The notes under the pieces: model-generated
Database searches by the model: none
Seen by the model: the letters and a program-made list of their open reading frames with translations, nothing else
Told to the model about the DNA's origin: nothing
Assembly: GCA_002269645.1 (NCBI GenBank)
Contig: NIVC01002738.1
Location: forward strand, 1 to 37,825
Source of the DNA: Macrostomum lignano
Lineage: Eukaryota
Direction of reading: 5' to 3'
Length of the DNA stretch: 37,825 nt
Made by a program: the position numbers and the translations under genes
In this document: one piece after another, positions 13,878-37,825 of the stretch
Layout: every line of letters starts with the position of its first letter
Position numbering within the stretch: the stretch's first letter is position 1

Positions 13878-14790
13878 GAAATCGCCTCCAATCTCACTTG
13901 AAATGACCTCCAATCTCACTAGGGATCGCCTCCAATCTCACTGGAAATGACCTCCAATCTCACTGAGAAACGCCTCCAAACTCACTGGAAATCACGTCCA
14001 ATCTCACTAGAAATCGCCTCCAAACTCACTGGAAATCGCCTCCAATCTCTCTTGGAATGATCTCCAATCTCACTGGGAATCGCCTCCAATCTCACTTGGA
14101 ATCGCCTCCAATCTCACTGGAAATCGCGTCCAATCTCACTGGAAATCGCCTCCAATCTCACTTGGAATGATCTCCAATCTCACTGGGAATCGCCTCCAAT
14201 CTCACTTGGAATCGCCTCCAATCTCACTGGAAATCGCCTCCAATCTCACTGGAAATCGCCTCTAATCTCACTGGGAATAATCCCCAATCTCACTGGAAAT
14301 CGCCTCCAATCTCACTGGAAATCGCCTCTAATCTCACTGGGAATAACCCCCAATCTCACTGGAAATCGCCTCCAATCTCACTGGGAATCGCCTCTAATCT
14401 CACTGGGAAACGCCTCCAATCTCACTTGGAATCGCCTCCAATCTCACTGGAAATCGCCTCCAATCTCTCTTGGAATGATCTCCAATCTCACTGGGAATCG
14501 CCTCCAATCTCACTTTGAATCGCCTCCAATCTCACTGGAAATCGCGTCCAATCTCACTGGAAATCGCCTCCAATCTCACTTGGAATGATCTCCAATCTCA
14601 CTGGGAATCGCCTCCAATCTCACTTGGAATCGCCTCCAATCTCACTGGAAATCGCCTCTAATCTCACTGGGAATGACCCCAATCTCACTGGAAATCGCCT
14701 CCAATCTCACTGGAAATCGCCTCTAATCTCACTGGGAAACGCCTCCAATCTCACTGGGAATCGCCTCCAATCTCACAGGGAATCGCCTCC
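13878..14790. repeat. 22-bp minisatellite (ctccaatctcactggaaatcgc), ~40 copies
   Basis: Tandem unit visible. Confidence 0.95.
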
Positions 14791-15224
14791 ATAGCCATTA
14801 AAATCGGCCACCAAAGTCACTTCAAAGACCCCCACTGCACACCTTCAATTCCAGGTGCCACAATTCGGCTATCAGTGCAGATGAACTCACAGGGCCACTC
14901 GTGCGCATCTCTGACTGATTTTGTTCATATTGGTTTACATTGAGTGCCGCATTGTGCTGCAGAATGCATTGCCAGATTCATCCAATCAGAAGCTGCATGC
15001 TATGCGCAATCATTCTTATCAAGTCTGTTTTGTAAATTCAGCGTGTCTTGGTGACCTGTGCTCAAGTTTATGTTGGTTGGGCTGCTCATGTGAGCAGAAC
15101 GGTTGCTATGGGCTCAAATCGGAGCCAGACACCCTGACATCCGCCTGACATCCTGACGTCCGCCTGACACTCTGACATCCGCCTTCCAAACCAACTGCAT
15201 TCGATTTTTTGTCCTGCGCCTGTG

Positions 15225-16308
15225 GTTCTTTGTGTCTGTGTGTTTGTCCGTGTGTCTGCTGTCTGTCTGTGTGTTTGTCCGTGTGTCTGCTGTCTGTCTG
15301 TGTGTTGTCCGTGTATCTGCTGTCTGTCTGTGTGTTGTCCGTGTATCTGCTGTCTGTCTGTGTGTTTGTCCGTGTTTTCCGTGTGTCTGCTGTCTGTCTG
15401 TGTGTTTGTCCGTGTGTCTGCTGTCTGTCTGTGTGTTGTCCGTGTATCTGCTGTCTGTCTGTGTGTTTGTCCGTGTGTCTGCTGTCTGTCTGTGTGTTTG
15501 TCCGTGTGTCTGCTGTCTGTCTGTGTGTTTGTCCGTGTGTCTGCTGTCTGTCTGTGTGTTTGTCCGTGTGTCTGCTGTCTGTCTGTGTGTTTGTCCGTGT
15601 ATCTGCTGTCTGTCTGTGTGTTTGTCCGTGTGTCTGCTGTCTGTCTGTGTGTTTGTCCGTGTGTCTGCTGTCTGTGTGTGTGTTTGTCCGTGTGTCTGCT
15701 GTCTGTCTGTGTGTTTGTCCGTGTGTCTGCTGTCTGTCTGTGTGTTTGTCCGTGTGTCTGCTGTCTGTCTGTGTGTTGTCCGTGTATCTGCTGTCTGTCT
15801 GTGTGTTTGTCCGTGTGTCTGCTGTCTGTCTGTGTGTTGTCCGTGTTGTCCGTGTGTCTGCTGTCTGTCTGTGTTTGTCCGTGTGTCTGCTGTCTGTGTG
15901 TGTGTCTGTCCGTGTGTCTGTCTGTCTGTCTGTGTTTGTCCGTGTGTCTGCTGTCTGTCTGTGTGTTTGTCCGTGTGTCTGTCTGTCTGTCTGTGTTTGT
16001 CCGTGTGTCTGCTGTCTGTCTGTGTGTCTGTCCGTGTGTCTGTCTGTCTGTCTGTGTTTGTCCGTGTGTCTGCTGTCTGTCTGTGTGTTTGTCCGTGTGT
16101 CTGCTGTCTGTCTGTGTGTTTGTCCGTGTTGTCCGTGTGTCTGCTGTCTGTCTGTGTGTTTGTCCGTGTGTCTGCTGTCTGTCTGTGTGTTTGTCCGTGT
16201 ATCTGCTGTCTGTCTGTGTGTCTGTCCGTGTGTCTGCTGTCTGTGTCTGTCCGTGTGTCTGCTATTTGTCTGTGTGTTTGTCCGTGTGTCTGCTGTCTGT
16301 CTGTGTCC
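15225..16308. repeat. 31-bp TG/TC-rich minisatellite, ~35 copies
   Basis: Unit ccgtgtgtctgctgtctgtctgtgtgtttgt; source of four spurious 400-aa ORFs. Confidence 0.95.
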
Positions 16309-17804: not shown

Positions 17805-18448
17805 TCTCCCATCCTCTACTCAGCTTCCGGTTCCCCATCCGCTACTCAGCTTCCGGTTCCCCATCCGCTACTCAGCTTCCGGTTCCCCATCCGCTACTCA
17901 GCTTCCGGTTCCCCATCCGCTACTCAGCTTCTGCGATTCCCCATCCGCTACTCAGCTTCTGCGATTCCCCATCCGCTACTCAGCTTCCGGTTCCCCATCC
18001 GCTACTCAACCTCTGGTTCCCCATCCCCTACTCAGCATCCGTTACCCCATCCTCTACTCAGCATCCGTTACCCCATCCCCTACTCAGCTTCCGCGGTTTA
18101 CCATCCGCTACTCAGCTTCCGATTCCCCATCCCCTACTCAGCTTCCGCGGTTTACCATCCGCTACTCAGGTTCCGGTTCCCCATCCAATACTCAACCTCT
18201 GGTTCCCCATCCCCTACTCAGCATCCGTTACCCCATCCCCTACTCAGCTTCCGCGGTTTACCATCCGCTACTCAATCTCTGGTTCCCCATCCCCTACTCA
18301 GCATCCGTTACCCCATCCTCTACTCAGCTTTCGCGGTTTACCATCCGCTACTCAGCTTCCGGTTCCCCATCAGCTACTCAGCTTCCGGTTCCCTATCCGC
18401 TACTCAGCTTCCGGTTCCCCATCAGCTACTCAGCTTCCGGTTCCCCAG
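17805..18448. repeat. 26-bp minisatellite (ccatccgctactcagcttccggttcc), ~24 copies, ending in a candidate splice acceptor
   Basis: Tandem unit visible; the last unit ends ...ggttccccAG at 18448. Confidence 0.92.
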
Positions 18449-18509: not shown

Positions 18510-18794
18510 ATGGTATTCGGCGGAGCTTCCGGTGGCAGCAGGCAGTCGGCGCTGGCGCCGCGCGATCCGAGCGACGAGGCGTTCCGCAAAATCTTCGTCG
18601 GCGGCCTCAGTCCCGACGTGAGCACCGACGGCCTGCGCGAGTACTTTGCCAAGTTCGGCGAAGTCACCGACTGCGTGGCGGTCAGGAACCCGGCCACTCA
18701 GCGGTCCAAGGGCTTCGGCTTCGTCACCTTCAAAGACGCCGAGACCGTGAATGCGGTGCAGGCCAAGCGGCCCCACACCATTCAGGATAAGGAG
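18510..18794 (+). CDS. hnRNP A/B-family 2xRRM protein, paralog 2, coding exon 1 (RRM1)
   Basis: KIFVGGLS (RNP2), KGFGFVTF (RNP1), RPHTIQDKE; GTGAGC donor at 18795 (phase 0). Confidence 0.9.
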
Positions 18795-18819
18795 GTGAGC
18801 GGAGCTCTGAGTAGCCCAG

Positions 18820-19235
18820 AAATGCCTCAGCTGCTCCCAGCCTCCCAGATGAAGCCTCAAATGCCTAAGCTGCTCCCAGTCTCCCAGATGAAGCCTCAAA
18901 TGCCTCACTCAGCTGCTCCCAGGCTACCAGATGAAGCCTCAAATGCCTCACTCACAGCTGCTCCCAGCCTCCCAGATGAAGCATCAAATGCCTCACTCAC
19001 AGCTGCTCCCAGCCTCCCAGATGAAGCATCAAATGTCTCACTCACAGCTGCTCCCAGCCTCCCAGATGAAGCCTCAAATGCCTCACGGCTGCTCCCAGCC
19101 TCCCAGATGAAGCCTCAAATGCCTCACGGCTGCTCCCAGCCTCCCAGATGAAGCATCAAATGCCTCACTCACAGCTGCTCCCAGCCTCCCAGATGAAGCA
19201 TCAAATGCCTCACTCACGGCTGCTCCCCGCCCTCT
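18820..19235. repeat. 41-45-bp intronic minisatellite (cctcccagatgaagcctcaaatgcctcactcacagctgctcccag)
   Basis: Tandem unit fills the intron of paralog 2. Confidence 0.92.
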
Positions 19236-19240
19236 CCCAG

Positions 19241-19792
19241 GTGGAGGTGAAGCGCGCGATGCCCCGTGACGAGGGCGACCGCCCGGAGTTCCGCGTCACC
19301 ACCCCGAAGCTGTTCGTTGGCTCGCTGCCGAAGGACGCCACCGAGGACGAGATCCGCGAGCAGTTCGGCCAGTTCGGTGACATCGAGTCCGTTGAAATCG
19401 CCCGCGTCAAGGAGACGGGCGACAGTCGCGGCTTCGGCTTCGTGACCTTCTCCGACTACGACTCCGTTGACAAGGCGGTGCTGCACCGGCCGCACCGAGT
19501 AAAGAACTGCGGTGTGGATGTGCGCAAGGGTCTCAGCCGCGAGGAGATGCAGCGGGTCCGCATGCGCCAGCAGCAGCAGCAGCAGCAGTTCCAGCAGCCC
19601 TACGGCTACCCGTACCAGCAGCAGGAAGCTGGAGGCTACGGCGGCTTCGCTGGAGGCTACGGCGGTGGCTACGGCGGCGGCTACGGGCCGCAAATCGGGC
19701 GCGGCGGCTGGCGGGGGGTGCCGTACGCAGGCGGCTGGCAGCGAGGCGGCGGCGGCGGCGGCTACCGAGGAGGTCGCGGCCGCGGCATTTGA
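19241..19792 (+). CDS. hnRNP A/B-family paralog 2, coding exon 2 (RRM2 plus polyQ/GGY/RGG tail); about 278 aa in total
   Basis: CAG acceptor at 19238-19240 gives VEVKRAMPRDE. RRM2 has LFVGSL and RGFGFVTF; the tail has GGYGG and RGG repeats. Confidence 0.9.
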   Translation: MEVKRAMPRDEGDRPEFRVTTPKLFVGSLPKDATEDEIREQFGQFGDIESVEIARVKETGDSRGFGFVTFSDYDSVDKAVLHRPHRVKNCGVDVRKGLSREEMQRVRMRQQQQQQQFQQPYGYPYQQQEAGGYGGFAGGYGGGYGGGYGPQIGRGGWRGVPYAGGWQRGGGGGGYRGGRGRGI

Positions 19793-23326: not shown

Positions 23327-24852
23327 TCAGTCTGACTCGGCCTTCCTTTTACGACCTCGACTTTGCGACTCGACTTTGAGGACTCCGGATGCTGCATCAA
23401 GTCCCTCCAGCTTCTGCCTGACCCAGCCGATCTTCTCCTCGTCCTGCGTCTCCATGGCGACGCGTCTCTCTTTCTCGATCATCTCCATCTGCTGCAGGCT
23501 GAGCTCCACGTGCTCGCGGCAGTCGCTGTAGTGAGCCAGAGTGAGCAGCTCCTCCAAGTCCGGGTCTCCAAGCAGCTGTTCAATCCAATGATCGAATGCG
23601 ATTGCAGGTGCGCGATTGCGGAGCAGCTCAGCTTGGAGACTCCAGCTCAGGCAGCGGAAGTTCACGTACAGGTGGGAGGAGAGAGGCTGCGACAGTCTGG
23701 CTGTGAACAGAGTCTGCGTGAACTCGGGAAGGAATGGGAAGCGAGGTGGACAGTCGCAGGGGAGGCAGAACCTCCATGCCCAGTCTAAAACTTTTGGCAG
23801 TCTTATACTTTTTAGCAAAATACCCTCTTCATAAATATCCTGTGGCTCCAACCCTGACTCAACCTGATGTCTCTGAAGCTCCATCGCGAGTCTCTTAGCC
23901 TCCTCAGATTCTCCGAACTTCAAATGCGCCATGGCGGTCATGCACAGGGCGGCGCACTTGCACCACTGCAGATGATTCAGGAGACTGAGCTGCCTCATCA
24001 GGGTGTCTCTGTCACTCGATTCTGACTGCAGCTCGCTCACACACTGGTGCACCACACTGTACACGTCTGCGAACTTGTAGTAAAACTCATAGTGACCACT
24101 TCCTTCCCTGATCTCCGTGACAGCAGGCGGCGCTGTCAGAGGCAGCAGAGTGAACGGGTGAAAGTAGAACTTCTCTGACTTCAGAGGTCTCACGAGTCTC
24201 CTCAGCTGCTCGACCACTCCGCCGATGTCGCTTCTCAGCTCACAAAGTCGGTCTCGAACCCTCGCCTTCGTGTTGTCGAAGTCGCCGCCGATTCCAGCGT
24301 TCTTGAAGTAGAGCGGAGCGTCGGGCATGAAGAAGTGCGGCATGCACTCATCGGGCGAGCTGCTCGAGTCGATAAAGCTCAGCATCATGTCGAGAGACTC
24401 TTTGAGTAGAGTGATCAGATTGTGGGGCTGCCAAGCTTCAGCTTTAGTAGCGCCATGAATTCCAAGCGGGATCCACCATGCTTCAGCTTTCGGATCTGTG
24501 CCATGCTTCTCCAGCATGAAGAATAGCAGAGTCTTTGCATGGTAGGTCTTGAGTCCAGGTGTGTCCAGAGTGAGCGGCAAGTGTCTCTTGAAGATGAACT
24601 TGGTGAGTGTGAACAGCTGGCCCTGGACTGTGCTCAGGTCTCTCATGATGTGTTTCTCTTGGAAGCTGAAGCTCACTCTGAGCTCGTTGGTCTTACTCGG
24701 TCTGGTCGCTCGCACGAGGTGAACAAGATCGCTGTATCCAAGCAGTTGTTTCACTCTGTTTTTACAGAAACTGCTGCAGCACTCGATCGCATGGCACGTG
24801 TCTTGTGCAGGCCGCACACCGCACGCCGTGGCTGTCACTGCAGGTTGGCTGC
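23327..24852 (-). CDS. Ankyrin-repeat cGAS-like receptor (cGLR/Mab-21 family), terminal exon: third catalytic Asp, Mab-21 C-lobe, helical tail, basic NLS-like end
   Basis: Acceptor ctctgcAG at 24854-24853 (phase 1). Reads QDTCHAIEC, LRVSFSFQEK, GLKTYHAKTLLF, W...LITLLKESL and CMPHFFMPD, which are Mab-21/cGAS C-lobe motifs. Ends RGRKRKAESD*. Confidence 0.88.
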
Positions 24853-26301
24853 CTGCAGAGCGCAGTGAGAGGAGAGTCGCTTTGTTAAATTCGTTAAAAT
24901 GCTTGTAGAGAGTTATTAGACCATACCGTAATGCTCTACTTAAAGTAATATTCTAAGGAAGTCAATTTCTTTCAATATGAGTCATATCTATTTTAGGAAT
25001 CACGCGCAAACAGAATGATTTAGAACCCTACATTGTTTGATCAAGGAACCGGATTTCAACAGCTGTATTTGTTTTTCTATGGTAATGCTCAAACATGCAT
25101 GACCGCTTAATCAAACATTTTTGACCTAAGTAAATACCCAATCCCAAACCGGTTTTTCTCCAAAATTTTGCTATAAATATAAGTCAACATTCGAGTCAAA
25201 AATTCAGACTCAGGGCGGTCTCTAAGAAGACTCCGAAGAAATAAGAAGACCAATCACAGAGGGACCACACCTGTCCAATTGGTAAGCGTTTACCCGATTT
25301 AGTTAATTGTTAATAGCGCTAATAAGTTGATTAATTGAGTATACGAGAGCCACTTATCGCTCGACACATTTGAGAAAGGCCTCCTTGTTTCCTAGGATAC
25401 ATTCGTAGAGGATTTATTGAATTGAATTGAGTTATCCGTTACGTTTCGGACGTAACGAAGAAGACGCCCTTCAGGAGGACCTATCACAGAAAGTTAGAGG
25501 ATTCAATTGTTCATAAGGGCGCACGTTCTACTGTTAATTCCGAGCTCGAGGACCGTCAAGAAATTCTGATTCGCTCTCGTTTTTGGTCGACCCACAGATA
25601 AAAGTCAAGGACTCAAGAAGACTACTCCAAATCGGCCGCTACTACCGTTCAACCAAGTCAGGCAGAGTCACACACCCACCGCAAGAACCAGAAGCCTACC
25701 AACCACAAGAGGATCCGCTGCAGTAAGTTATTTGAACTGGTAAATACCTAGGCACTTGTTCCCCAGTGTCTAGAAGTGGGAGTTTTTGAGTGACTGATCA
25801 CCACTCTTAAACTCTTCATGCTTGCAGGGGCACCGCTATGGAGCTGATGATGGGCCGAGAAAGAGAAAAATTATTTTACGCTTCTACTTTCTCTCAGCTC
25901 AGGTTTTAACGTATCGCGTTTTGTAGACATGAGTATAATATAACGCGCCCTCACAAAATTCTACATTGATGCCCCGCAAAAAGTAATGTTTATATTATTG
26001 TCATTAATGCAAGAGATTTCCGGGCATCAATGTCGAAAATTCCGGGCTCTGTGTTATTACACAGAATGCAGTTGAAATGTCTATGGCCATTCTTTCTTTT
26101 GATTTGCGAGCTCTGGGCCATAGACGAAGTTTTGATGGTCCAGGTCTAGAGATGGACAGTAAAACTGAAGGAGCTAGAAAAATGCTAAATGTATATTTTT
26201 TCAAATCTATTTGATATTTTTCAAATCTGTCAGGACTAAGCTGTGCTTGACTTCTGAAAATGATCTACCATTTAATTAATTATTCTAATCTGCCGGGAGA
26301 A

Positions 26302-26715
26302 ATGGTTTCCGGTATGTCGGCCGAAGAGCTGGCGTGGGTATCATCCGAGTCGAACAGCCGGTATTTGGAGGAACTGAGCGAAGAATTTGCGCGCAAGATA
26401 GAATCAGAAGAGATTCTCGACATTCCGGAGGACGTGATGCAAGAGTTGAATCAGCTTGAACGAGATGGAATACCGGACTCCTTCGCCCGGCAGATGGAGG
26501 ACAATGTGAGCCGCTTCAAGACTTTTCTGGAAGAAATGAAACTGTCAACGGATCTGCCGCGAATTCCAAAGTCGATTCTGGCTAATTATTTGCGTTTCTT
26601 CTATTCGACACTGCGAACAAAGGACGAGCGGTACTATGCTCCAGCAAGTCTCATCTGCATTAGAGCCGGACTGCATCGCTTCTTCTGTCTCAGTCGCCCA
26701 GAGATTAACATTAAC
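26302..26715 (+). mobile_element. Crypton-like (tyrosine-recombinase transposon; DUF3504/ZMYM-KCTD1-type N-terminal region) fragment, 3'-truncated, antisense within the cGLR intron
   Basis: LANYLRFFYSTLRTKDERYYAPASLICIRAGLHRFF matches the L..FY..LR.KDG..Y...SL..IRAGL.R pattern. The ORF runs into (ATTAAC)n before any catalytic R-H-R-Y region. Confidence 0.65.
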
Positions 26716-27112
26716 ATTAACTTCTGCTGTTATTTGTTTGCCTCTGTTTCACACTGTTGTTCTATTTCGCTCTATTACTGAGATAGAAAATACCATAGAC
26801 AATTCAAGGCACGAATTGCCACATTGACGCCCGGAAAAGGGACGCTTAAGCCGGCAAAAATTAATGACAATGTATGCTAAGTTTCTGTTGAGATTCCCCT
26901 GCCTTACTTCTTAAAAAATAAAAAAATTACAAACAGTGCGAGAAAGGGTGAAAATATGTGAATAAAAACCAGACGATATAAACCTCATGGCAGAGAAGCT
27001 GCTTGGAGCTGCTGGAGGCTGAATTAAAATTCGAGCAAATTAATGGGCAAATCCAGCGAATCCTGCTGCATGCGGATCTCAGCATTTTGATGATGAACCC
27101 AGCGTCACTCAC

Positions 27113-27477
27113 CTGCTCCCACTGCCACCTGTGCGTGGCCCTCCGTGACCTGCAGCCGAGTGGCGTTTTGGCAGGATCCAGATCTTCCTTTGCAGCCACC
27201 TTCCAGATGGAACTCTTGCCCTTCAACCAGCACAGTCCAGTCAATGTCCGAGTCTGCAGCTGTCCTGCCGTTCACTTGCACCAGACTGTTGGCCCAGCCC
27301 TCTGCGTAGCTGCCCGTCATCTGCCTGCGATCCTGTGTGAGGACTTGAGCGACTCCTTCCAGCCAGTCAGCCAGTCTCTGCTGACACTTTGCTCTCTGAT
27401 GGGTGAATCCCGCATCGCTGAGCAGTCGATGCAGCTCCTCGCTGAGACGGTGGTCTTGCTCGGAGTGGTCTGAGAGT
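27113..27477 (-). CDS. ANK-cGLR exon carrying the nucleotidyltransferase active site
   Basis: Pyrimidine tract plus AG acceptor at 27479-27478 (phase 2). Reads LSDHSEQDHRLSEELHRLL...QMTGSYAEGWANSLVQVNGRTAADSDIDWTVLV. GTGAGT donor at 27112 (phase 1), in phase with the next exon. Confidence 0.85.
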
Positions 27478-27567
27478 CTGGGGGGGGGATGATGAGAAAG
27501 GAGTCAGTGGAGTGAAGCGTGGCCCAAGCTCGACCCAAGAGAGGGCAGTGAAAGCGGTCAGACTCAC

Positions 27568-27609
27568 TGATGAAGGCGTTGAGCGGCTGGCTGTGGGTGC
27601 TGAGGGTTT
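27568..27609 (-). CDS. ANK-cGLR 42-nt micro-exon (phase 2-2)
   Basis: Acceptor ...cacattccAG at 27611-27610 and donor GTGAGT at 27567. Encodes (E)NPQHPQPAAQRLH(Q) and keeps the frame between the ANK and NTase exons. Confidence 0.65.
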
Positions 27610-27683
27610 CTGGAATGTGTGAAGGAAAGCGAGGTAAGGTAGCGAAGTGATTGCAAGTAGAATGGCAACTAATGGCAACTGAC

Positions 27684-30600
27684 TCGGTGGGATTCAGCAG
27701 CCGCAGCACCTGCCGCTGCTCAAATCGCTCTGCGAGCTGCGCACAGGTGAGGCCCTGACTGTCTCGATGGCTGGCATCGGCTCCATTGTCGATGAGAATC
27801 TTGGCTGCTTGCACGTAACCGGCTTGGCAGGCTCGTGAGAGAGCGGTGCGACCGTGAGTGTCTTGAGCGTGCAGTGAGGCGCCGAGATCGATGAGTTTGT
27901 GAATGAGTTCGTGATGACCTGCATCAGCTGCCAGCATGAGAGCGGTGGCTCCGGTGTTGTCGTCTGGGAGATCGACATGCTGTGTGCTGAATCGCTGATG
28001 ATTGAGCAGTGTGGCGGCAAGAGCGACGTGTCTTTGAGAGATGGAGAGACGGAGCAGCTGTGTGATTTGAGCTGTCTGCATCTGAGAGAGGGTTTTGTTG
28101 AGAACGGAGTTTCTGTCTTCGATGGCCATTGCTGCAGTGAAGCTGAGGATGGTGTTGTATTGAAAGAGCCAGTCGGGCTCGAGACCGAGGGAGGCAACGA
28201 CATTTTCGTGAAGACGAGAGCAAGCCGCGATTGCGCATTGGAAACGGAGATTCGCTCTCTGATCCAGACTAGAGACACAGGAGATGAGAAACTTGACGAT
28301 TTCAAAGTGATCAAAAATTGCAGCTTTATCGGCAGCTTTGATGCAGCAGGTGTCCCTGTTTGATTGGTCATTGATTTGTGAGACGAAAAACTTGACGATT
28401 TCAAAGTGACCATTTTGCAGCTTTTCGGCAGCTTTGATGCAGCAGGTGTCCCTTTTGATTGGTCATTGATTTGTGAGAGAAAACTTGACGATTTCAAAGT
28501 GACCATTGTGCAGCTTTTTCGGCAGCATTGATGCAGCAGGTGTCCCTGTTTGATTGGTCATTGATTTGTGGGACGAGAAACTTGACGATTTCAAAGTGAC
28601 CATTGTCTGCAGCTTTTTCGGCAGCTTTGATGCAGCAGGTGTCCCTGTTTGATTGGTCATTGATTTGTGGACGAGAAACTTGACGATTTCAAAGTGACCA
28701 TAATTTGCAGCATTTTCGGCAGCTTTGATGCAGCAGGTGTCCCTTTTGATTGGTCATTGATTTGTGAGAGAAAACTTGACGATTTCAAAGTGACCTAATG
28801 CAGCATTCGGCAGCATTGATGCAGCAGGTGTCCCTTTTTGATTGGTCATTGATTTGTGGGACAAGAAACTTGACGATTTCAAAGTGACCATTGTTTGCAG
28901 CTTTTCGGCAGCATTGATGCAGCAGGTGTCCCTTTTTGATTGGTCATTGATTTGTGGACGAGAAACTTGACGATTTCAAAGTGACCATTGTCTGCAGCAT
29001 TTTCGGCAGCTTGATGCAGCAGGTGTCCCTGTTTGATTGGTCATTGATTTGTGGGACGAGAAACTTGACGATTTCAAAGTGACCCTTGACTGCAGCCCAT
29101 TCGGCAGCTTTGATGCAGCAGGTGTCCCTGTTTGATTGGTCATTGATTTGTGAGACGAGAAACTTGACGATTTCAAAGTGACCCTTGACTGCAGCCTTTT
29201 CGGCAGCTTTGATGCAGCAGGTGTCCCTGTTTGATTGGTCATTGATTTGTGAGACGAAAACTTGACGATTTCAAAGTGACCCTTGACTGCAGCTATTTTG
29301 GCAGCTTTGATGCAGCAGTGTCCCTTTTTGATTGGTCATTGATTTGTGAGACGAGAAACTTGACGATTTCAAAGTGACCATGGTCTGCAGCTATTTTGGC
29401 AGCTTTGATGCAGCAGGTGTCCCTTTTTGATTGGTCATTGATTTGTGAGACGAGAAACTTGACGATTTCAAAGTGACCATGGTCTGCAGCTATTTTGGCA
29501 GCTTTGATGCAGCAGTGTCCCTTTTTGATTGGTCATTGATTTGTGGACGAGAAACTTGACGATTTCAAAGTGATCAAAAATTGCAGCTTTTCGGCAGCTT
29601 TGATGCAGCAGGTGTCCCTTTTTGATTGGTCATTGATTTGTGGACGAGAAACTTGACGATTTCAAAGTGACCATTGTCTGCAGCTATTTTGGCAGCTTTG
29701 ATGCAGCAGTTGTCCCTTTTTGATTGGTCATTGATTTGTGACGAGAAACTTGACGATTTCAAAGTGACCATTGTCTGCAGCTTTTTGGCAGCTTTGATGC
29801 AGCAGTGTCCCTTTTTGATTGGTCATTGATTTGTGGGACGAGAAACTTGACGATTTCAAAGTGACATTGCAGCTTTTCGGCAGCTTTGATGCAGCAGGTG
29901 TCCCTTTTTGATTGGTCATTGATTTGTGGGACGAGAAACTTGACGATTTCAAAGTGACCATTGTCTGCAGCTTTTTCGGCAGCATTGATGCAGCAGGTGT
30001 CCCTTTTTGATTGGTCATTGATTTGTGGGACAAGAAACTCGGCGATTTCAAAGTGACCCTTGACTGCAGCTTTTCGGCAGCTTTGATGCAGCAGGTGTCC
30101 CTTTTGATTGGTCATTGATTTGTGGACAAGAAACTTGACGATTTCAAAGTGACCATTGTCTGCAGCTTTTTCGGCAGCATTGATGCAGCAGGTGTCCCTG
30201 TTTGATTGGTCATTGATTTGTGAGACGAGAAACTTGACGATTTCAAAGTGACCATTGTCTGCAGCTTTTTCGGCAGCATTGATGCAGCAGGTGTCCCTTT
30301 TTGATTGGTCATTGATTTGTGGGACAAGAAACTCGGCGATTTCAAAGTGACCTTGTCTGCAGCTTTTCGGCAGCTTTGATGCAGCAGGTGTCCCTGTTTG
30401 ATTGGTCATTGATTTGTGAGACGACAAACTTGACGATTTCAAAGTGACCATGGTCTGCAGCTTTTTCGGCAGCTTTGATGCAGCAGGTGTCCCTGTTTGA
30501 TTGGTCATTGATTTGTGGGACGAGAAACTTGACGATTTCAAAGTGACCCTTGACTGCAGCTTTTCGGCAGCTTTGATGCAGCAGGTGTCCCTTTTTGATT

Positions 30601-31272
30601 GGTCATTGATTTGTGGACAAGAAACTCGGCGATTTCAAAGTGACCATTGTCTGCAGCTTTTTCGGCAGCATTGATGCAGCAGGTGTCCCTGTTTGATTGG
30701 TCATTGATTTGTGAGACGAGAAACTTGACGATTTCAAAGTGACCATTGTCTGCAGCTTTTTCGGCAGCTTTGATGCAGCAGGTGTCCCTGTTTGATTGGT
30801 CATTGATTTGTGGGACGAGAAACTTGACGATTTCAAAGTGACCCTTGACTGCAGCCTTTTCGGCAGCTTTGATGCAGCAGGTGTCCCTTTTTGATTGGTC
30901 ATTGATTTGTGGGACAAGAAACTCGGCGATTTCAAAGTGACCATTGTCTGCAGCTTTTTCGGCAGCTTTGATGCAGCAGGTGTCCCTGTTTGATTGGTCA
31001 TTGATTTGTGAGACGAGAAACTTGACGATTTCAAAGTGACCATTGTCTGCAGCTTTTTCGGCAGCATTGATGCAGCAGGTGTCCCTGTTTGATTGGTCAT
31101 TGATTTGTGGGACGAGAAACTTGATGATTTCAAAGTCACCGTTGTCTAAAGCACTGTGAGTGGCCTGAACGATATCACTTAAGCTGGACGATGTCGTACC
31201 ATGGGCACGTCGAGCAGTTTGCGGGATGTTTTCGGTCGTGACGAACTGATGCTGACTTTGATTTTGGCTCAT
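27684..31272 (-). CDS. ANK-cGLR first coding exon: short N-terminus, ~30 near-identical 33-aa ankyrin-type repeats, linker and ~3 canonical ankyrin repeats; many 1-nt deletions in the array as assembled
   Basis: ATG at 31272. Repeats read RDTCCIKAAEKAADNGHFEIVKFLVPQINDQSK. The last repeat (28306) runs without a stop into MAIEDR...TGATALMLAADAGH...HGRTALSRACQAGY...QGLTCAQLA. Candidate donor GTCAGT at 27683 (phase 2). Confidence 0.78.
28290..31160 (-). repeat. Coding tandem array of 30 x ~99 bp (33-aa ankyrin-type unit)
   Basis: The anchor gatttcaaagt (FEI codons) was counted 30 times between ~28298 and ~31126. Confidence 0.95.
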
Positions 31273-31851: not shown

Positions 31852-32430
31852 TCTGGCTGCTGTCAGAGTGGCAGATGTCAGTCACGGCTGCTGTCAGAGT
31901 GGCAGATGTCAGTCACGGCTGCTGTCAGAGTGGCAGATGTCAGTCACGGCTGCTGTCAGAGTGGCAGATGTCAGTCACGGCTGCTGTCAGAGTGGCAGAT
32001 GTCAGTCACGGCTGCTGTCAGAGTGGCAGATGTCAGTTACGGCTGCTGTCAGAGTGGCAGATGTCAGTCACGGCTGCTGTCAGAGTGGCAGATGTCAGTC
32101 ACGGCTGCTGTCAGAGTGGCAGATGTCAGTCACGGCTGCTGTCAGAGTGGCAGATGTCAGTCACGGCTGCTGTCAGAGTGGCAGATGTCAGTCACGGCTG
32201 CTGTCAGAGTGGCAGATGTCAGTCACGGCTGCTGTCAGAGTGGCAGATGTCAGTCACGGCTGCTGTCAGAGTGGCAGATGTCAGTCACGGCTGCTGTCAG
32301 AGAGGCAGATGTCAGTCACGGCTGCTGTCAGAGTGGCAGATGTCAGTCACGGCTGCTGTCAGAGAGGCAGATGTCAGTCACGGCTGCTGTCAGAGAGGCA
32401 GATGTCAGTCACGGCTGCTGTCAGAGTGGA
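31852..32430. repeat. 31-bp minisatellite (ggcagatgtcagtcacggctgctgtcagagt), ~18 copies
   Basis: Highly homogeneous tandem unit. Confidence 0.95.
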
Positions 32431-32928: not shown

Positions 32929-34370
32929 GCCCACCAAGAGACAGGGACTCCCACCAAGAGACAACAGACAGGGGCGCCCACCAAGAGACTGGGGCGCCCA
33001 CCAAGAGACAGGGGCACCCACCAAGAGACAGGGGCGCCCACCAAGAGACAACAGACAGGGGCGCCCACCAAGAGACTGGGGCGCCCACCAAGAGACAGGG
33101 GCACCCACCAAGAGACAGGGGCGCCCACCAAGAGACAGTGGCGCCCACCAAGAGACAGGGGCGCCCACCAAGAGACAGGGGCGCCAACCAAGAAACAGGG
33201 GCGCCCACCAAGAGACAGGGGCGCCCACCAAGAGACAGGGGTGCCCACCAAGAGACAGGGGTGCCCACCAAGAGACAGGGGCGCCCACCAAGAGACTGGG
33301 GCGCCCACCAAGAGACAGGGGCACCCACCAAGAGACAGGGGCGCCCACCAAGAGACAACAGACAGGGGCGCCCACCAAGAGACTGGGGCGCCCACCAAGA
33401 GACAGGGGCACCCACCAAGAGACAGGGGCGCCCACCAAGAGACAGGGGCGCCCACCAAGAGACAGGGGCGCCCACCAAAAGACAGGGGCGCCAACCAAGA
33501 AACAGGGGCGCCCACCAAGAGACAGGGGCGCCCACCAAGAGACAGGGGTGCCCACCAAGAGACAGGGGTGCCCACCAAGAGACAGGGGCGCCAACCAAGA
33601 GACAGGGGCGCCCACCAAGAGACAGGGGCGCCCACCAAGAGACAGTGGCGCCCACCAAGAGACAGGGGCGCCCACCAAGAGACAGGGGCGCCCACCAAGA
33701 GACAGGGGCGCCCACCAAGAGACAGGGGCGCCCACCAAGAGACAGGGGCGCCCACCAAGAAACAGGGGCGCTCACCAAGAGACAGGGGCGCCCACCAAGA
33801 GACAGGGGCGCCCACCAAGAGACAGGGGCGCCCACCAAGAGACAGGGACGCCCACCAAGAGACAGGGGCGCCCAGCAAGAGACAGGGGCGCCCACCAAGA
33901 GACAGGGGCGTCCACCAAGAGACAGACAGACAGGGGTGCCCACCAAGAGACAGGGACTCCCACCAAGAGACAGGGGCACCCACCAAGAAACAGGGGCGCC
34001 CACCAAGAGACAGGGGCACCAACCAAGAGACAGGGGTGCCCACCAAGAGACAGGGGCGCCCACCAAGAGACAGGGGCGCCCACCAAGAGACAGGGGTGCC
34101 CACCAAGAGACAGGGGCGCCAACCAAGAGACAGGGGCGCCAACCAAGAGACAGGGGCGCCCACCAAGAGACAGGGGCGCCAACCAAGAGACAGGGGCGCC
34201 CACCAAGAGACAGGGGCGCCCACCAAGAGACAGGGGCGCCCACCAAGAGACAGGGGCGCCCACCAAGAGACAGGGACTCCCACCAAGAGACAGACAGACA
34301 GGGGTGCCCACCAAGAGACAGGGGCGCCCACCAAAAGACAGGGGCACCCACCAAGAGACAGGGGTGCCAG
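32929..34370. repeat. 20-bp minisatellite (ccaccaagagacaggggcgc), ~70 copies
   Basis: Tandem unit visible; source of the spurious 400-550-aa ORFs. Confidence 0.95.
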
Positions 34371-34479: not shown

Positions 34480-35555
34480 GTATATTTCCGTTTTCGCCAC
34501 TTTACGCGTGGACCGCAAGCAATCTGATGGGGCGGGTGGTCCGCTGAGCTTTATCCGAGACCACCTTGAATACAAGCGCATCCCAGTTGACACAGCAGAG
34601 CCGATTGAGATCTGTCGCGTGCGTGTCTTTCTGGGCACCAAGAAGTCCCTGGTCGTTGACAACATCTACGCAACGATCGATCGAGGCACATCCGCCGCGA
34701 CCCACGCCCGCACCGCTGCTGTCTACCGCGCTTTGAACCGGGAAGAGCTGCCAGATCCGCCAGGACGCAGTGCTCTTGGCGAGGTGCTCTTGGCGAGGTG
34801 CTCCTGGCGAGTTGCTCCTGGCGAGGTGTTCTTGGCGAGGTGCTCCTGGCGAGGTGCTCTTGGCGAGGTGCTCCTGGCGAGATGCTCTTGGCGAAGTGCT
34901 CTTGGCGAGGTGCTCTTGGCGAGGTGCTCCTGGCGAGGTGCTCCTGGCGAGGTGCTCCTGGCGAGATGCTCTTGGCGAGGTGCTCTTGGCGAGGTGCTCC
35001 TGGCGAGGTGCTCCTGGCGAGTTGGTCCTGGCGAGGTGCTCTTGGCGAGGTGCTCCTGGCGAGGTGCTCTTGGTGAGGTGCTCTTGGCGAGGTGCTCCTG
35101 GCGAGGTGCTCTTGGCGAGGTGCTCTTGGCGAGGTGCTCCTGGCGAGGTGCTCTTGGCGAGGTGCTACTGGCGAGGTGCTCTTGGCGAGGTGCTCCTGGC
35201 GAGGTGCTCTTGGCGAGGTGCTCCTGGCGAGATGCTCTTGGCGAGGTGCTCCTGGCGAGGTGCTCTTGGCGAGGTGCTCCTGGCGAGGTGCTCTTGGCGA
35301 GGTGCTCCTGGCGAGGTGCTCCTCTTTCTGGAAACTTCTGGCCTTCTCCGCGCCTACAGCACCATCGCTAACCCAGCCGCTGACCCCACCTGTCACCGCT
35401 GTATGGAGGGCCCTGAAGACCTCAAAAAACACTGGCTGGGTTGCCTCGCCCTCCCGGCACCTGAGGCTGAAAATCTTCGATGAGGACACCCTGGACTCGA
35501 GGTTCTGACCGCCGCCCCTGCGACGAGGTCGGTGGCGCTCTCTGATTGCACTTGA
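34480..35555 (+). mobile_element. Internally deleted non-LTR retrotransposon (LINE) remnant: APE endonuclease fragment joined to the C-terminal CCHC region, with no RT
   Basis: RVDRKQSDGAGGPLSFIRDHLEY..IEICRVRVFLGTKKSLVVDNIY is APE-like. It is followed by HARTAAVYR...EVLLAR and LLRAYSTIANPAADPTCHRCMEGPEDLKKHWLGC (CCHC knuckle), then RLKIFDED. Confidence 0.65.
34768..35325. repeat. 14-bp minisatellite (gaggtgctc[c/t]tggc), ~40 copies, inside the LINE remnant
   Basis: Tandem unit visible; it reads EVLL(A) in the LINE frame. Confidence 0.95.
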
Positions 35556-35940: not shown

Positions 35941-37825
35941 TCACTGCTTGTAGCAGACGGGCTGCTTTGCTGTCCTGGGATGAGGCCTCTGCGCAATCGG
36001 ACCGTCGTTGGCCGAATTTGCCTCTGTCACAGGCGCCCCCGGCCGCTGATCGCCGTCCATCTCGTCAAGGTCCCAGGGGCACTCACGAAGCGGCTTCGTC
36101 TCGGTCACATGCCGCCGAATGACTGCCGTGCCGCGTTGCAGAGTCAGGGCGCCGCCGCTGACTGCCTTGACAAGCCAAGGCCGCGGGTCGAACGGACAGC
36201 GCAGCTTGGCCTTGCCGCGGTTTCTGAGCAGCACGCGGGCGCCTGCCAGGATGCCGTGTGGCGCAGCCGAACGCCGCGTGTCGGCCGCCTTGCGCATCGC
36301 CTGCTTGTAGCCGCGGTCGTGGAGCTGCAGCTGCCGTCCGGAGCTGCCGGTTTGCTTTGTCAGGCCAGATGGCAGGATGTCGCCGGTCTCTCGGTTGAAC
36401 ATGAGGTCGTTGGGCGTGCGGTCGGTGCCTTGGTGCACAGAGTTGCGGTATCCGAGCAGCCACTCGTGGATCGCCCGCCGCCAGTCGTTGCCTTCGGCCG
36501 TGGCGGCGTTGATGGCCTTGTTGAGGCTGCGGTTGAAGCGCTCCACCTCGCCGTTCGCCGCCGGGTAGAGTGGGGTGACCCTGCGCTGTCGAACCCGAGG
36601 CCGTCCAGAAACACGTTGAATTCTTCGCTCGTGAAGTAGGTGGCGTTGTCCGTAGTGATCTGCTGCGGCACACCGAAGCGGCTGAATGAGGCAATGACGC
36701 AGTTGATGACGCTGGCGCTGGTGAGGCTGCGCACCACGTAGAGGTCCGGGTAGCGGCTGAAGTAGTCCACCAAGACAACTACGTTCTCGCCCGTTGGGAA
36801 TGGTCCGCACACGTCGACGCTGAGCGATTGCCAGGCCCCCGACGGAAGCGGCGTCGGCTGCATCGGCGGGTGTTTCACGGCGCCGTCGGTCCGGGCCGCT
36901 TGACACGGGAGGCAGTTAGTGACGACCGCCTCGACCTGCTTGGACATGCCGGGCCACCAGACCTTACGCTGCAGTCGGTCGCACGTCTTCTTCTGTCCGA
37001 GGTGGCCCTGGTGCGCTAAACGATCGTAAGCTGCTGAAGCTCCGCCGGATCACGATTCTGTTTCCCCGGAGCAGAAGGCCTGCGTGAACGCTCAGTTCGT
37101 CTTTGAGGGACCGAAAACTGTGCGCCGGGCTCGCCGCGCCGCAGCTCCAGTTTCCTGTTTCCAAGGCGCGCATGACGACACCAGAGCTGGGTCTCTCTCG
37201 GTCGCAGCCTGGATCCTGTCGACGGTCAGGCCCTTTGGGGTGGCCGCTTGGACAACGGCGTTGCACAGTCTGGTGTCCTCAGCCTCGTCTTTGTGTGACG
37301 ATGCGCTTGTCAGCGGATTGCGGCTCAGTGGGTCTGCCGGGTTGTCCTCGCCTTTGCGGTAGTGCAGTGTGAACGTGAAGTGCTGGGTCTGCAGCATGAT
37401 ACGCTCGAGCCGGGGCGGCGGCCTTGAGTCTGCTCTGTAGATCCCGAGCAGCGGCTTGTGGTCGGTGTAGATATCAAAGTGCGGGCAGCCCTCCAGGTAA
37501 AACGCGAACTTCAAGCAGCCGAACTTGACGCCCAGGGCCTCGCGCTCGATCTGGCTGTAGCGCCGTTCGACGTCACTGAGCGTGCGGCTCGCGTAGGCCA
37601 CCGGCCGCGTCTGCCCGCTTGGGTGCCGCTGCTGCAGAATGGCACCAACGCCGACGGGTGACGCAGCGACCACCAGCTCGGTCGGCAGCCGCTTGTCGAA
37701 GAAGGCCAGCGTGCAGCCCTCGGAGATGCAGTCCTTGACGGCCTGGAAGGACTGCTGCTGCTCGCGGTCCCAGACGAATTCCTGGCCTTTCGTGTTAGTC
37801 GCCTCAGCGGCTCCGCTTTGTTGGA
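35941..37825 (-). mobile_element. pol: Ty3/Gypsy (Mag-like) pol: end of RT/connection, RNase H and integrase; several frameshifts; continues beyond the window
   Basis: EFVWDREQQQSF; RNase H ASPVGVGAIL..PVAYASRTL..YSQIEREAL..TDHKPL; integrase HQGHLG..WWPGM..C..C zinc finger, SVDVCGPF, TTDNA and NGEVERFNRSL (D,D,E). The RH-then-IN order indicates Gypsy. Confidence 0.95.

What the first reader, a model, noticed from the sequence alone, without database searches (positions are those of the whole stretch)
23327..31272. Giant ankyrin-array cGAS-like receptor (ANK30-ANK3-cGLR-helical tail), hidden by splicing and frameshifts
Four phase-compatible exons (31272-27684, 27609-27568, 27477-27113, 24852-23327) join a ~30-unit ankyrin array to a Mab-21/cGAS fold, giving ~1,850 aa. 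Seen: MTGS-X20-DIDW at 27320-27237, and a third Asp (QDTCHAIEC, 24802) about 59 residues later. Established: this fits the CD-NTase/cGLR active-site consensus h[QT]GS-X8-20-[DE]h[DE]h-X50-90-h[DE]h, except that the third Asp has polar neighbours. cGLRs make cyclic dinucleotide second messengers in animal innate immunity, and some carry ANK or TPR fusions. Inference: a catalytically competent pattern-recognition receptor whose large repeat array acts as a ligand or pathogen sensor, in a lineage whose cGLR signalling is poorly characterised. An automated annotator would probably miss the link.
Basis: partly seen in the sequence, partly recalled or inferred. Interest (0 to 1): 0.9.

Follow-up and report, generated by a model that had tools for sequence, protein, structure and literature searches.

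The report
Flatworm ankyrin-array cGAS-like receptor gene
This is a real gene of the flatworm Macrostomum lignano that joins a very long ankyrin-like repeat array to a cGAS-like enzyme domain, but its family is already catalogued as cGAS-like receptors and the "frameshifts" look like genome-assembly errors, so it is an unusually large member of a known kind.

Summary
All four exons, the GT..AG introns and the GS / DID / D motif are at the stated coordinates. The window is a whole contig of the Macrostomum lignano Mlig_3_7 assembly. The gene is already annotated as BOX15_Mlig032893g1 (partial, 885 aa). That model already joins the three ankyrin repeats to the Mab-21 exons.

An AlphaFold model of exons 2-4 (pLDDT 86.7) matches human cGAS, MAB21L1 and MiD51 best. 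The catalytic residues are kept in 31-33 of 35 alignable paralogs.

The 30-unit, 99-nt array is real but read-through is broken in at least 13 units. Almost all breaks are 1-nt deletions in short homopolymers. A duplicate contig with no mismatch over about 4.9 kb outside the array carries a different set of deletions (35 and 37 sites, 6 shared). The assembly is PacBio/Canu polished only with short reads. The frameshifts are therefore most likely consensus errors, and a protein of about 1,850 aa is plausible but unproven.

Li et al. 2023 already list M. lignano ANK-cGLR fusions. They cloned an 82%-identical paralog, and no flatworm enzyme is among their 15 active ones. Catalysis, ligand and downstream receptor remain untested.

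Verdict: new member of a known kind, moderate-to-low interest.

The parts
27684..31272 (-). Exon 1: start codon ATG 31272-31270, 41-aa N-terminus, repeat array, linker and three canonical ankyrin repeats
   Evidence: An in-frame stop lies two codons upstream of the ATG. The N-terminal ORF aligns from Met1 with Met1 of paralog P0008, 62% identity. The donor is CCGA|gt. As assembled it is broken into 9 open segments.
28220..31146 (-). Tandem array of 30 units of 99 nt, each encoding a 33-aa ankyrin-like helical hairpin (consensus DNGHFEIVKFLVPQINDQSNRDTCCIKAAEKAA); the last unit is divergent and runs into the linker
   Evidence: TRF gives period 99, 29.3 copies, 92% matches. Pfam Ank_2 E 3.2e-37 on the first 244 aa. 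20 of 33 codons are invariant and there is no nonsense substitution. 35 deletion sites against the consensus, nearly all 1 nt in homopolymers, and only 6 are shared with the duplicate contig.
27690..27961 (-). Three canonical ankyrin repeats (ANK3) at the 3' end of exon 1
   Evidence: Pfam Ank_2 1.3e-17 and Ank 4.2e-14. Helical hairpins with pLDDT around 90 in the model of P0001.
27568..27609 (-). Micro-exon 2 (42 nt, NPQHPQPAAQRLHQ): flexible linker between the ankyrin solenoid and the NTase domain
   Evidence: Boundaries ag|..|gtgagt. Present in the deposited protein P0001. Residues 242-259 of the model have pLDDT below 50.
27113..27477 (-). Exon 3: N-terminal spine helices and the first NTase strands, with G55-S56 (MTGS 27320-27309) and D77/D79 (DIDW 27248-27237)
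   Evidence: Splice sites. In the model, strand R50-T54 is followed by G55-S56, and strand 77-84 carries D77 and D79. GS is kept in 35-36 of 37 aligned sequences and D77/D79 in 33/32 of 35.
24853..27112 (-). Intron 3 (2,260 nt); contains an unrelated + strand ORF at 26260-26781
   Evidence: GCAG|gtgagt ... ctgcag|GCAG. There is no gap at this junction in the alignment with P0008, so no exon is missing. The ORF has only a weak QRICH1-domain hit, E 0.088.
23327..24852 (-). Exon 4: rest of the NTase core with the third acidic residue D139 (24802-24800), the Mab-21 C-terminal helix bundle (about 24565-24311), a family-specific tail of about 280 aa (24181-23330) and stop TGA 23329-23327
   Evidence: 503-aa ORF. 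Pfam Mab-21_C 21 bits, E 3.8e-4, below the 24.1-bit cut-off. Profile match of this stretch to cGAS chains, E 3e-6. D139 lies on strand 137-145. The tail is conserved in all paralogs.
24434..24478 (-). Copy-specific 15-aa insertion WWIPLGIHGATKAEA, flanked by a repeated KAEAW, in a loop of the helix bundle
   Evidence: Absent from P0008 and other paralogs. pLDDT is below 50 at residues 244-257 of the 629-aa model.

Best explanation
The locus is one transcribed gene of Macrostomum lignano (BOX15_Mlig032893g1). It belongs to a very large lineage-specific radiation of ankyrin-fused cGAS-like receptors (Mab-21 fold).

The true product most likely starts at ATG 31272. It reads through about 30 ankyrin-like 33-aa repeats, a linker and three canonical ankyrin repeats. 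A flexible tether encoded by the micro-exon follows, then a cGAS-type nucleotidyltransferase domain with an intact GS / DxD / D active site, and finally a family-specific C-terminal domain of about 280 aa. Total length is about 1,850 aa.

The frameshifts in the array are uncorrected long-read consensus errors in a tandem repeat that short-read polishing could not fix.

Inferred mechanism, not shown: the ankyrin solenoid binds a protein or other ligand, or holds the enzyme in an auto-inhibited or oligomeric state. It thereby controls synthesis of a nucleotide second messenger by the NTase domain. The repeat number and a few variable positions in each repeat tune what is recognised.
For: Identity and splicing:
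- 100% match to the deposited protein.
- Mlig_3_7 gene models come from RNA-seq-guided transcript assemblies plus TransDecoder (PMC5730564).

One gene:
- P0008 shows Met-repeats-linker-ANK3-cGLR-tail in one protein. It is collinear with the window's N-terminal ORF (62% identity from Met1) and with P0001 (82%).

Fold:
- AlphaFold model with pLDDT 86.7 and pTM 0.88.
- The top 22 Foldseek PDB matches are human cGAS and MAB21L1 (best E 4.9e-7, TM 0.43-0.53 on the target). MiD51, CdnD and DncV follow.
- The family profile hits cGAS chains at E 3e-6 and cGLR1 (8gjy) at 6e-5.
- Remote profile hits pass Pfam PF03281 and PF20266.

Active site:
- G55-S56, D77, D79 and D139 sit on the expected strands.
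- They are kept in 31-33 of 35 alignable paralogs.

Frameshifts as errors:
- The breaks are 1-nt deletions in CCC/AAAAA/CC runs.
- The duplicate contig L001 has 0 mismatches over about 4.9 kb of exons and introns outside the array. Across exon 1's repeat region (window 31500-28100) it has 57 mismatches and 61 gaps in 3.3 kb.
- Deletion sites number 35 in the window and 37 in the duplicate, with only 6 shared.
- There are no nonsense substitutions in 29 units, and 20 of 33 codons are invariant.
- The assembly was made with Canu on PacBio reads and polished only with Pilon on short reads. It has 180 Mb of redundant blocks (PMC5730564).
Against: - No read-level or cDNA evidence covers the array. 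The deposited model stops inside it.
- Six deletion sites are shared by both contigs and could be real.
- A naive merge of the two copies did not restore one ORF.
- A search with the N-terminal array found no independent intact giant protein.
- The third Asp has polar neighbours (Q, T), and the GS-to-DxD spacing of 20 is at the upper limit of the consensus.
- The NTase core has pI 7.0, not the basic surface expected of a nucleic-acid binder.
- Five M. lignano family members, including an 82%-identical paralog, were in the Li et al. screen. None is among the 15 active enzymes.
- cGAS and STING were not found in the planarian Schmidtea (PMC13563047). I could not test for STING in M. lignano.
Confidence: 0.6

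Rival explanations
1. The repeat array is truly degenerate: a recently amplified coding minisatellite that has accumulated slippage frameshifts. The functional product, if any, is only the ANK3-cGLR part, translated from an internal start such as Met at 28129 (MAIEDRNS...).
For: At least 13 frame-breaking units in the window and a similar number in the duplicate contig. Six deletion sites are shared. Several paralogs are annotated as starting at the homologous MAIEGRNS (P0003, P0004). P0005 and P0006 lack an array.
Against: About 85% of deletion sites are private to one of two contigs that have no mismatch elsewhere. All are in homopolymers. No nonsense substitutions, and 20 of 33 codons are invariant. 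The first 6.5 units are intact from an ATG homologous to that of P0008. The polishing method cannot correct tandem repeats.
Confidence: 0.2
2. The protein has the Mab-21 fold but is not an enzyme. Like MAB21L1 or MiD49/51, it would act as a nucleotide-binding or purely structural scaffold, with the ankyrin array mediating protein-protein assembly.
For: MAB21L1 and MiD51 are among the best structural matches. Pfam PF03281 does not hit, and PF20266 is below its cut-off for this protein. The third Asp has polar neighbours. pI of the core is 7.0. Close paralogs are not among the active enzymes in vitro. Some paralogs have lost the acidic residues (P0026, P0029, P0034, P0038, P0041).
Against: All three acidic residues and GS are kept in 31-33 of 35 alignable paralogs down to about 33% identity, which is hard to explain without catalysis or at least metal-nucleotide binding. 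Li et al. state that many cGLRs are inactive in vitro because their ligand is unknown.
Confidence: 0.3
3. Two separate genes: an ankyrin-repeat gene (31272 to about 28400) and a downstream ANK3-cGLR gene.
For: The deposited model is 5'-partial and begins inside the array. On the duplicate contig the array is called as separate small genes of 97 and 183 aa.
Against: There is no stop or splice signal between the last repeat and the linker. P0008, P0009, P0012, P0015 and P0040 carry repeats, linker, ANK3 and cGLR in one protein. The small gene calls are bounded by the frameshifts.
Confidence: 0.05

Closest known systems
M. lignano ANK-fused cGLRs catalogued by Li et al. 2023 (e.g. PAA68676.1 = BOX15_Mlig016402g1 = P0008; also PAA93208.1)
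   Same: Same family and architecture. 82% identity over 871 aligned columns, the same MTGS...DSDIDW...RPAQDTCHA motif and the same C-terminal tail.
   Different: P0008 has 3 N-terminal ankyrin-like repeats and the window has about 30. The window copy has a 15-aa loop insertion. Its array is frame-broken in the assembly, and its N-terminus is MS.. rather than MG..
Human cGAS and Drosophila/Tribolium cGLR1
   Same: Predicted fold (Foldseek E 4.9e-7 to cGAS), profile-level sequence similarity in the helix bundle, and GS / [DE]x[DE] / [DE] on equivalent strands.
   Different: 12-16% identity. No basic N-terminus, and the core has a neutral pI. It has extra ankyrin domains and a 280-aa tail. Ligand, product and receptor are unknown.
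MAB21L1 and MiD49/MiD51 (Mab-21-fold proteins with no shown second-messenger synthesis)
   Same: Equally good structural matches (5eom E 1.4e-5; 4oaf 2e-3).
   Different: The window protein keeps all three acidic active-site residues, and so do most of its paralogs.
[quoted passage not shown] 2023)
   Same: cGLR core fused to protein-interaction repeats, and a strong lineage-specific radiation: at least 88 clusters at 50% identity with E<=1e-30, all sampled ones from M. lignano.
   Different: Different phylum, one in which most members are reported to have no cGLR other than Mab21-like. The repeat here is a non-canonical 33-aa hairpin amplified about 30 times.
Long ankyrin solenoids (ankyrin-B/G membrane-binding domains, DARPins)
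   Same: 33-residue period, Pfam Ank hits, and DARPin/AnkB/AnkG as best fold matches of the N-terminal part. Variation between units is concentrated at a few positions, including the two residues before GH.
   Different: Array units lack the TPLH motif. They are modelled as a 10-residue plus a 17-residue helix rather than the canonical helix pair with a beta-hairpin loop. The units are about 92% identical, which indicates very recent amplification.

Membership tests
cGLR (criteria of Li et al. 2023, PMC9980059) | Active-site motif h[QT]GS-X8-20-[DE]h[DE]h-X50-90-h[DE]h | tested here: met
   M-T-G-S, X20, D-I-D-W, X57, Q-D-T. All acidic residues and spacings fit. Only the two 'h' positions around the third Asp are polar. 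The identical AQDTC is present in PAA68676.1, which Li et al. list among their cGLRs.
cGLR (criteria of Li et al. 2023) | Sequence homology across both the NTase core and the C-terminal helix bundle | tested here: met
   The family profile hits cGAS chains (E 3e-6) and cGLR1 8gjy (6e-5) in the helix bundle. Its remote hits (E about 1e-15 to 1e-19) pass Pfam PF03281 and PF20266. The single sequence alone scores only 21 bits on PF20266 (cut-off 24.1) and does not hit PF03281.
cGLR (criteria of Li et al. 2023) | Predicted structural homology to known cGLR/CD-NTase enzymes (AlphaFold2) | tested here: met
   Model pLDDT 86.7, pTM 0.88. The 22 matches with E<=1e-3 are all cGAS or MAB21L1. MiD51, CdnD and DncV follow.
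cGLR | Synthesis of a nucleotide second messenger that depends on the active-site acids | not testable with these tools
   Literature only: five M. lignano relatives were cloned for the screen, and the 15 active enzymes did not include flatworms.
cGLR | Activation by a pathogen-associated ligand and signalling through STING or another receptor | not testable with these tools
   No searchable M. lignano proteome was available here. cGAS and STING were not found in the planarian Schmidtea (PMC13563047). Parasitic flatworms have 0 cGLR and 0 STING in Table S5 of Li et al..
Mab-21 (Pfam PF03281 / PF20266) | Score above Pfam's gathering threshold | tested here: inconclusive
   PF20266 scores 21 bits against a 24.1-bit cut-off, and PF03281 gives no hit for this protein. 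Many paralogs carry a precomputed PF20266 hit.
Ankyrin repeat | 33-residue repeat matching Ank profiles and forming a helix-turn-helix solenoid | tested here: met
   Ank_2 E 3.2e-37 on the array ORF and 1.3e-17 on ANK3. Solenoid with pLDDT around 90 and DARPin/ankyrin-B/G best fold matches. Array units are non-canonical: no TPLH, and helices of 10 and 17 residues.
Pseudogene | Disabling mutations that are reproducible in independent sequence of the same locus | tested here: not met
   Only 6 of 35 (window) and 37 (duplicate contig) deletion sites are shared, although the contigs have no mismatch outside the array. There are no nonsense substitutions. Read-level confirmation is still lacking.

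The most novel reading that the evidence does not exclude
The N-terminal array could be a rapidly expanding, copy-number-variable recognition surface. In-frame repeat counts seen in deposited paralogs run from 0 to about 10, against about 30 conceptual units here. Variation is confined to a few repeat positions, including the canonical ankyrin binding positions. The radiation in M. lignano (at least 88 clusters at 50% identity) would then be a flatworm-specific receptor repertoire that replaces lost TLR/NLR/STING pathways. Some members are wired directly to caspase or RING effectors (P0026, P0057, P0047), which would mean a STING-independent route from a cGLR to cell death.
Probability: 0.12. 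Interest if true: 0.8.

Novelty: new member of a known kind. Interest (0 to 1): 0.35.

Why it matters
Most flatworms are reported to have lost cGLR and STING signalling, yet M. lignano carries a very large radiation of ankyrin-fused cGLRs whose ligands and outputs are unknown. This copy has the longest repeat array seen in the family. It is therefore a good test case for whether repeat number and repeat-surface variation set specificity in fused cGLRs. M. lignano is also transgenic- and RNAi-tractable. On the practical side, the case shows that coding tandem repeats in the Mlig_3_7 assembly carry uncorrected indels. These truncate gene models and can mimic pseudogenes.

Tried and rejected
1. 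Fold search with the whole 885-aa model returned only DARPin/ankyrin matches. I re-modelled exons 2-4 alone.
2. A search of the 5.8-billion-protein set with the N-terminal array ORF, looking for an independent intact giant protein, returned only unrelated ankyrin proteins of oomycetes, amoebae and metagenomes. Not even the M. lignano paralogs appeared, because repeated words saturated the prefilter.
3. A naive merge of the two contigs, filling 1-2-nt gaps, still left 7 open segments. Alignment in a tandem repeat creates paired artefactual gaps, so this neither supports nor refutes the error hypothesis. The per-unit comparison of deletion sites is the cleaner test.
4. Pfam on exon 3 alone gave only noise.
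5. Literature searches for Macrostomum with cGAS, Mab21 or STING found nothing specific beyond Li et al. 2023 and the Schmidtea paper.
6. I considered a missing exon in the 2.2-kb intron 3, because the DxD-to-D spacing is short. I rejected this because P0001 and P0008 align without a gap across the junction.
7. I did not try to find STING in M. lignano. The word-indexed search cannot be restricted to one organism, and no M. lignano genome collection is searchable here.
Full report
**Origin and annotation.** A protein search with the spliced product of exons 2-4 returned a 100%-identical, 100%-covering entry. It is 'hypothetical protein BOX15_Mlig032893g1, partial [Macrostomum lignano]' (P0001, 885 aa), on a contig of exactly 37,825 bp. 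The window is therefore a whole contig of the Mlig_3_7 assembly (GCA_002269645.1). The deposited protein already joins the last two array repeats, the linker, the three canonical ankyrin repeats, the micro-exon and both Mab-21 exons. Mlig_3_7 gene models come from RNA-seq-guided transcript assembly (StringTie/TACO) with TransDecoder ORFs (PMC5730564). The three introns therefore have indirect transcript support.

**Checking the observation.** All proposed exon boundaries are canonical GT..AG. The frame of the 3' part of exon 1 leaves 2 nt that combine with exon 2. Exons 2-4 then read to TGA at 23329-23327. MTGS-X20-DIDW is at 27320-27237 and the third Asp is at 24802-24800. Tandem Repeats Finder reports a 99-nt array at 28286-31147 with 29.3 copies, 92% matches and 2% indels. 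I count 30 units between 31146 and 28220. Pfam gives Ank_2 E 3.2e-37 for the first 244 aa and 1.3e-17 for the ANK3 region.

**The frameshifts.**
- Unit lengths are 99 nt in 13 cases and 93-98 nt in the rest. At least 13 are not multiples of three.
- ATG 31272 and the 3' end of the exon are in different frames, and the exon breaks into 9 open segments.
- Aligned to the consensus, the breaks are almost all 1-nt deletions in CCC, AAAAA or CC runs.
- A second contig (L001, start of NIVC01001464.1) is collinear with window 13160-37171.
- Outside the array the two have 0 mismatches over about 4.9 kb of exons and introns. Across exon 1's repeat region (window 31500-28100) they differ by 57 mismatches and 61 gaps in 3.3 kb.
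- Unit by unit, the window has 35 deletion sites against the consensus and the sister contig has 37. Only 6 are shared. For example, the first five units are intact in the window, but four of them carry a deletion in the sister.
- Corrected conceptually, the 29 regular units have no nonsense substitution. 20 of 33 codons are invariant. The variation sits at nine main positions, with a few single changes elsewhere.
- The assembly was made with Canu 1.4 from PacBio reads and polished only with Pilon on Illumina and RNA-seq reads. It contains 180 Mb of redundant blocks (PMC5730564). Short reads cannot be placed uniquely in a 2.9-kb array of 92%-identical units (inference).
- I conclude that most or all frameshifts are consensus errors. 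This is not proven. Six shared sites could be real, and a naive merge of the two copies did not give one ORF.

**One gene or two.** Paralog P0008 (998 aa) begins MGQNQSRHQQATTENI. It has three of the same repeats, then the same linker, ANK3, cGLR and tail. The window's N-terminal ORF aligns with it from Met1 (62% identity), and P0001 aligns with residues 90-942 at 82%. P0009, P0012, P0015 and P0040 show 3 to about 10 repeats in frame, while P0005 and P0006 have none. The array is thus a variable N-terminal module of the family, and this copy is the largest seen.

**Fold and active site.**
- The full model of P0001 (pLDDT 85.2) shows a continuous solenoid (residues 1-240), a disordered tether (242-259, the micro-exon) and a globular C-terminal part. 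Its fold search was swamped by DARPins.
- The model of exons 2-4 alone (pLDDT 86.7, pTM 0.88) matches human cGAS best (9c8n E 4.9e-7; TM 0.43-0.53 on the target). MAB21L1, MiD51, CdnD and DncV follow.
- A profile of eight diverse family members hits cGAS chains (E 3e-6) and cGLR1 8gjy (6e-5).
- An exhaustive profile search found 1,105 representatives. The remote ones pass Pfam PF03281 and PF20266.
- On its own, the window protein scores only 21 bits on PF20266 and misses PF03281.
- In the model, G55-S56 follow strand 50-54, D77 and D79 lie on strand 77-84, and D139 lies on strand 137-145.
- GS is kept in 35-36 of 37 aligned sequences, and the three acids in 31-33 of 35. Losses occur in a few divergent members, including the caspase-fused P0026.

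**What is already known.**
- Li et al. 2023 (PMC9980059) define cGLRs by the same motif, by two-lobe homology and by AlphaFold similarity. They note ANK and TPR fusions, and state that nematodes and most platyhelminths have no cGLR other than Mab21-like.
- Their Table S2 lists M. lignano accessions with Ank_2 domains, including PAA68676.1.
- Their Table S3 lists five M. lignano proteins cloned for the biochemical screen. These include PAA68676.1 (= P0008) and PAA93208.1 (nearly identical to P0012 over the printed stretch).
[quoted passage not shown] The authors stress that many cGLRs are inactive in vitro, probably for want of the right ligand.
- The kind is therefore known and a close paralog has been handled. 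This gene and its array expansion have not been described in any paper I could find.

**Scale of the family.** 88 clusters at 50% identity score E<=1e-30, and every strong hit I looked up is from M. lignano. Assembly redundancy inflates this number. Some members carry C-terminal caspase (P0026, P0057), RING (P0047) or AAA-type (P0109) domains.

**Mechanism.** Shown: gene structure, fold, conserved active-site residues, and a repeat solenoid tethered by a flexible linker. Inferred: the solenoid senses a ligand or partner and controls nucleotide second-messenger synthesis. Points against a classical nucleic-acid sensor are the neutral pI of the core (7.0) and the negative screen for close relatives. 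The main rival for function is a non-enzymatic Mab-21 scaffold. The main rival for structure is a truly decayed array with an internally initiated ANK3-cGLR product.

**Verdict.** The finding is a new, unusually large member of a known kind. Interest is moderate to low unless accurate reads confirm the intact array of about 30 repeats and biochemistry finds an activity.

Noticed in passing
window 26260-26781 (+), inside intron 3: A 173-aa ORF on the opposite strand with only a weak QRICH1-domain similarity (E 0.088). It may be a fragment of a mobile or domesticated element inserted in the intron.
   Followed up: partly
window 24434-24478 (-): Copy-specific in-frame 45-nt insertion (WWIPLGIHGATKAEA) flanked by a repeated KAEAW. 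It is absent from paralogs and is modelled as a disordered loop in the helix bundle.
   Followed up: partly
window 5816-9741 (+): EGFR-like receptor tyrosine kinase. Furin-like and growth-factor-receptor domain IV lie in ORF 5816-7738, and a tyrosine-kinase domain (E 6.6e-91) lies in ORF 7711-9741. The two ORFs overlap by 28 nt in different frames, so there is either a short intron or another assembly indel.
   Followed up: partly
window 12879-13814 (+) and 18510-19792 (+): RRM-domain (hnRNP-like) coding ORFs. The first contains a 33-nt coding minisatellite (13506-13687, GPMGMMGPGPM repeats). The second locus is interrupted by a 45-nt repeat array (18828-19231).
   Followed up: partly
window 35941-37673 (-): Remnant of an LTR-retrotransposon pol gene (RNase H E 3e-25, integrase core E 3e-9) split over several frames.
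   Followed up: partly
whole window, e.g. 513-873, 13880-14791, 15227-16306, 17808-18447, 31855-32429, 32929-34368, 34770-35321: Very high density of minisatellites: 52 TRF rows, with arrays of 14-31-nt units reaching 1-1.4 kb. This fits the reported 15% simple/tandem repeat content of this genome.
   Followed up: no
L001 1-23778 versus window 13160-37171: A second contig of the same assembly is collinear, with no mismatch in unique sequence. It differs in every tandem array and by a 1,330-nt indel in the 5' flank of the gene. This is assembly redundancy or a second haplotype. On it the repeat array is called as separate small genes (97 and 183 aa).
   Followed up: yes
paralogs P0026, P0057, P0047, P0109 (other M. 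lignano loci): Family members fuse the cGLR-like domain to a C-terminal caspase domain (P0026, P0057), a RING finger plus WSC domain (P0047) or an AAA/zeta-toxin-like P-loop domain (P0109). P0026 has lost two of the three active-site acids.
   Followed up: partly
window 31272-31255 (-) versus P0008 residues 1-6: P0008 starts MGQNQS, which resembles an N-myristoylation consensus (my own knowledge, not tested). The window copy and its duplicate contig start MSQNQS.
   Followed up: no
window 23330-24181 (-): The C-terminal part of about 280 aa (helices plus a small beta-sheet, DWAWRFCLPC...FLPEFT...HLYVNF) is conserved in all family members and confidently modelled. It has no Pfam match and lies beyond the part that aligns with cGAS, so it may be an undescribed domain.
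   Followed up: partly
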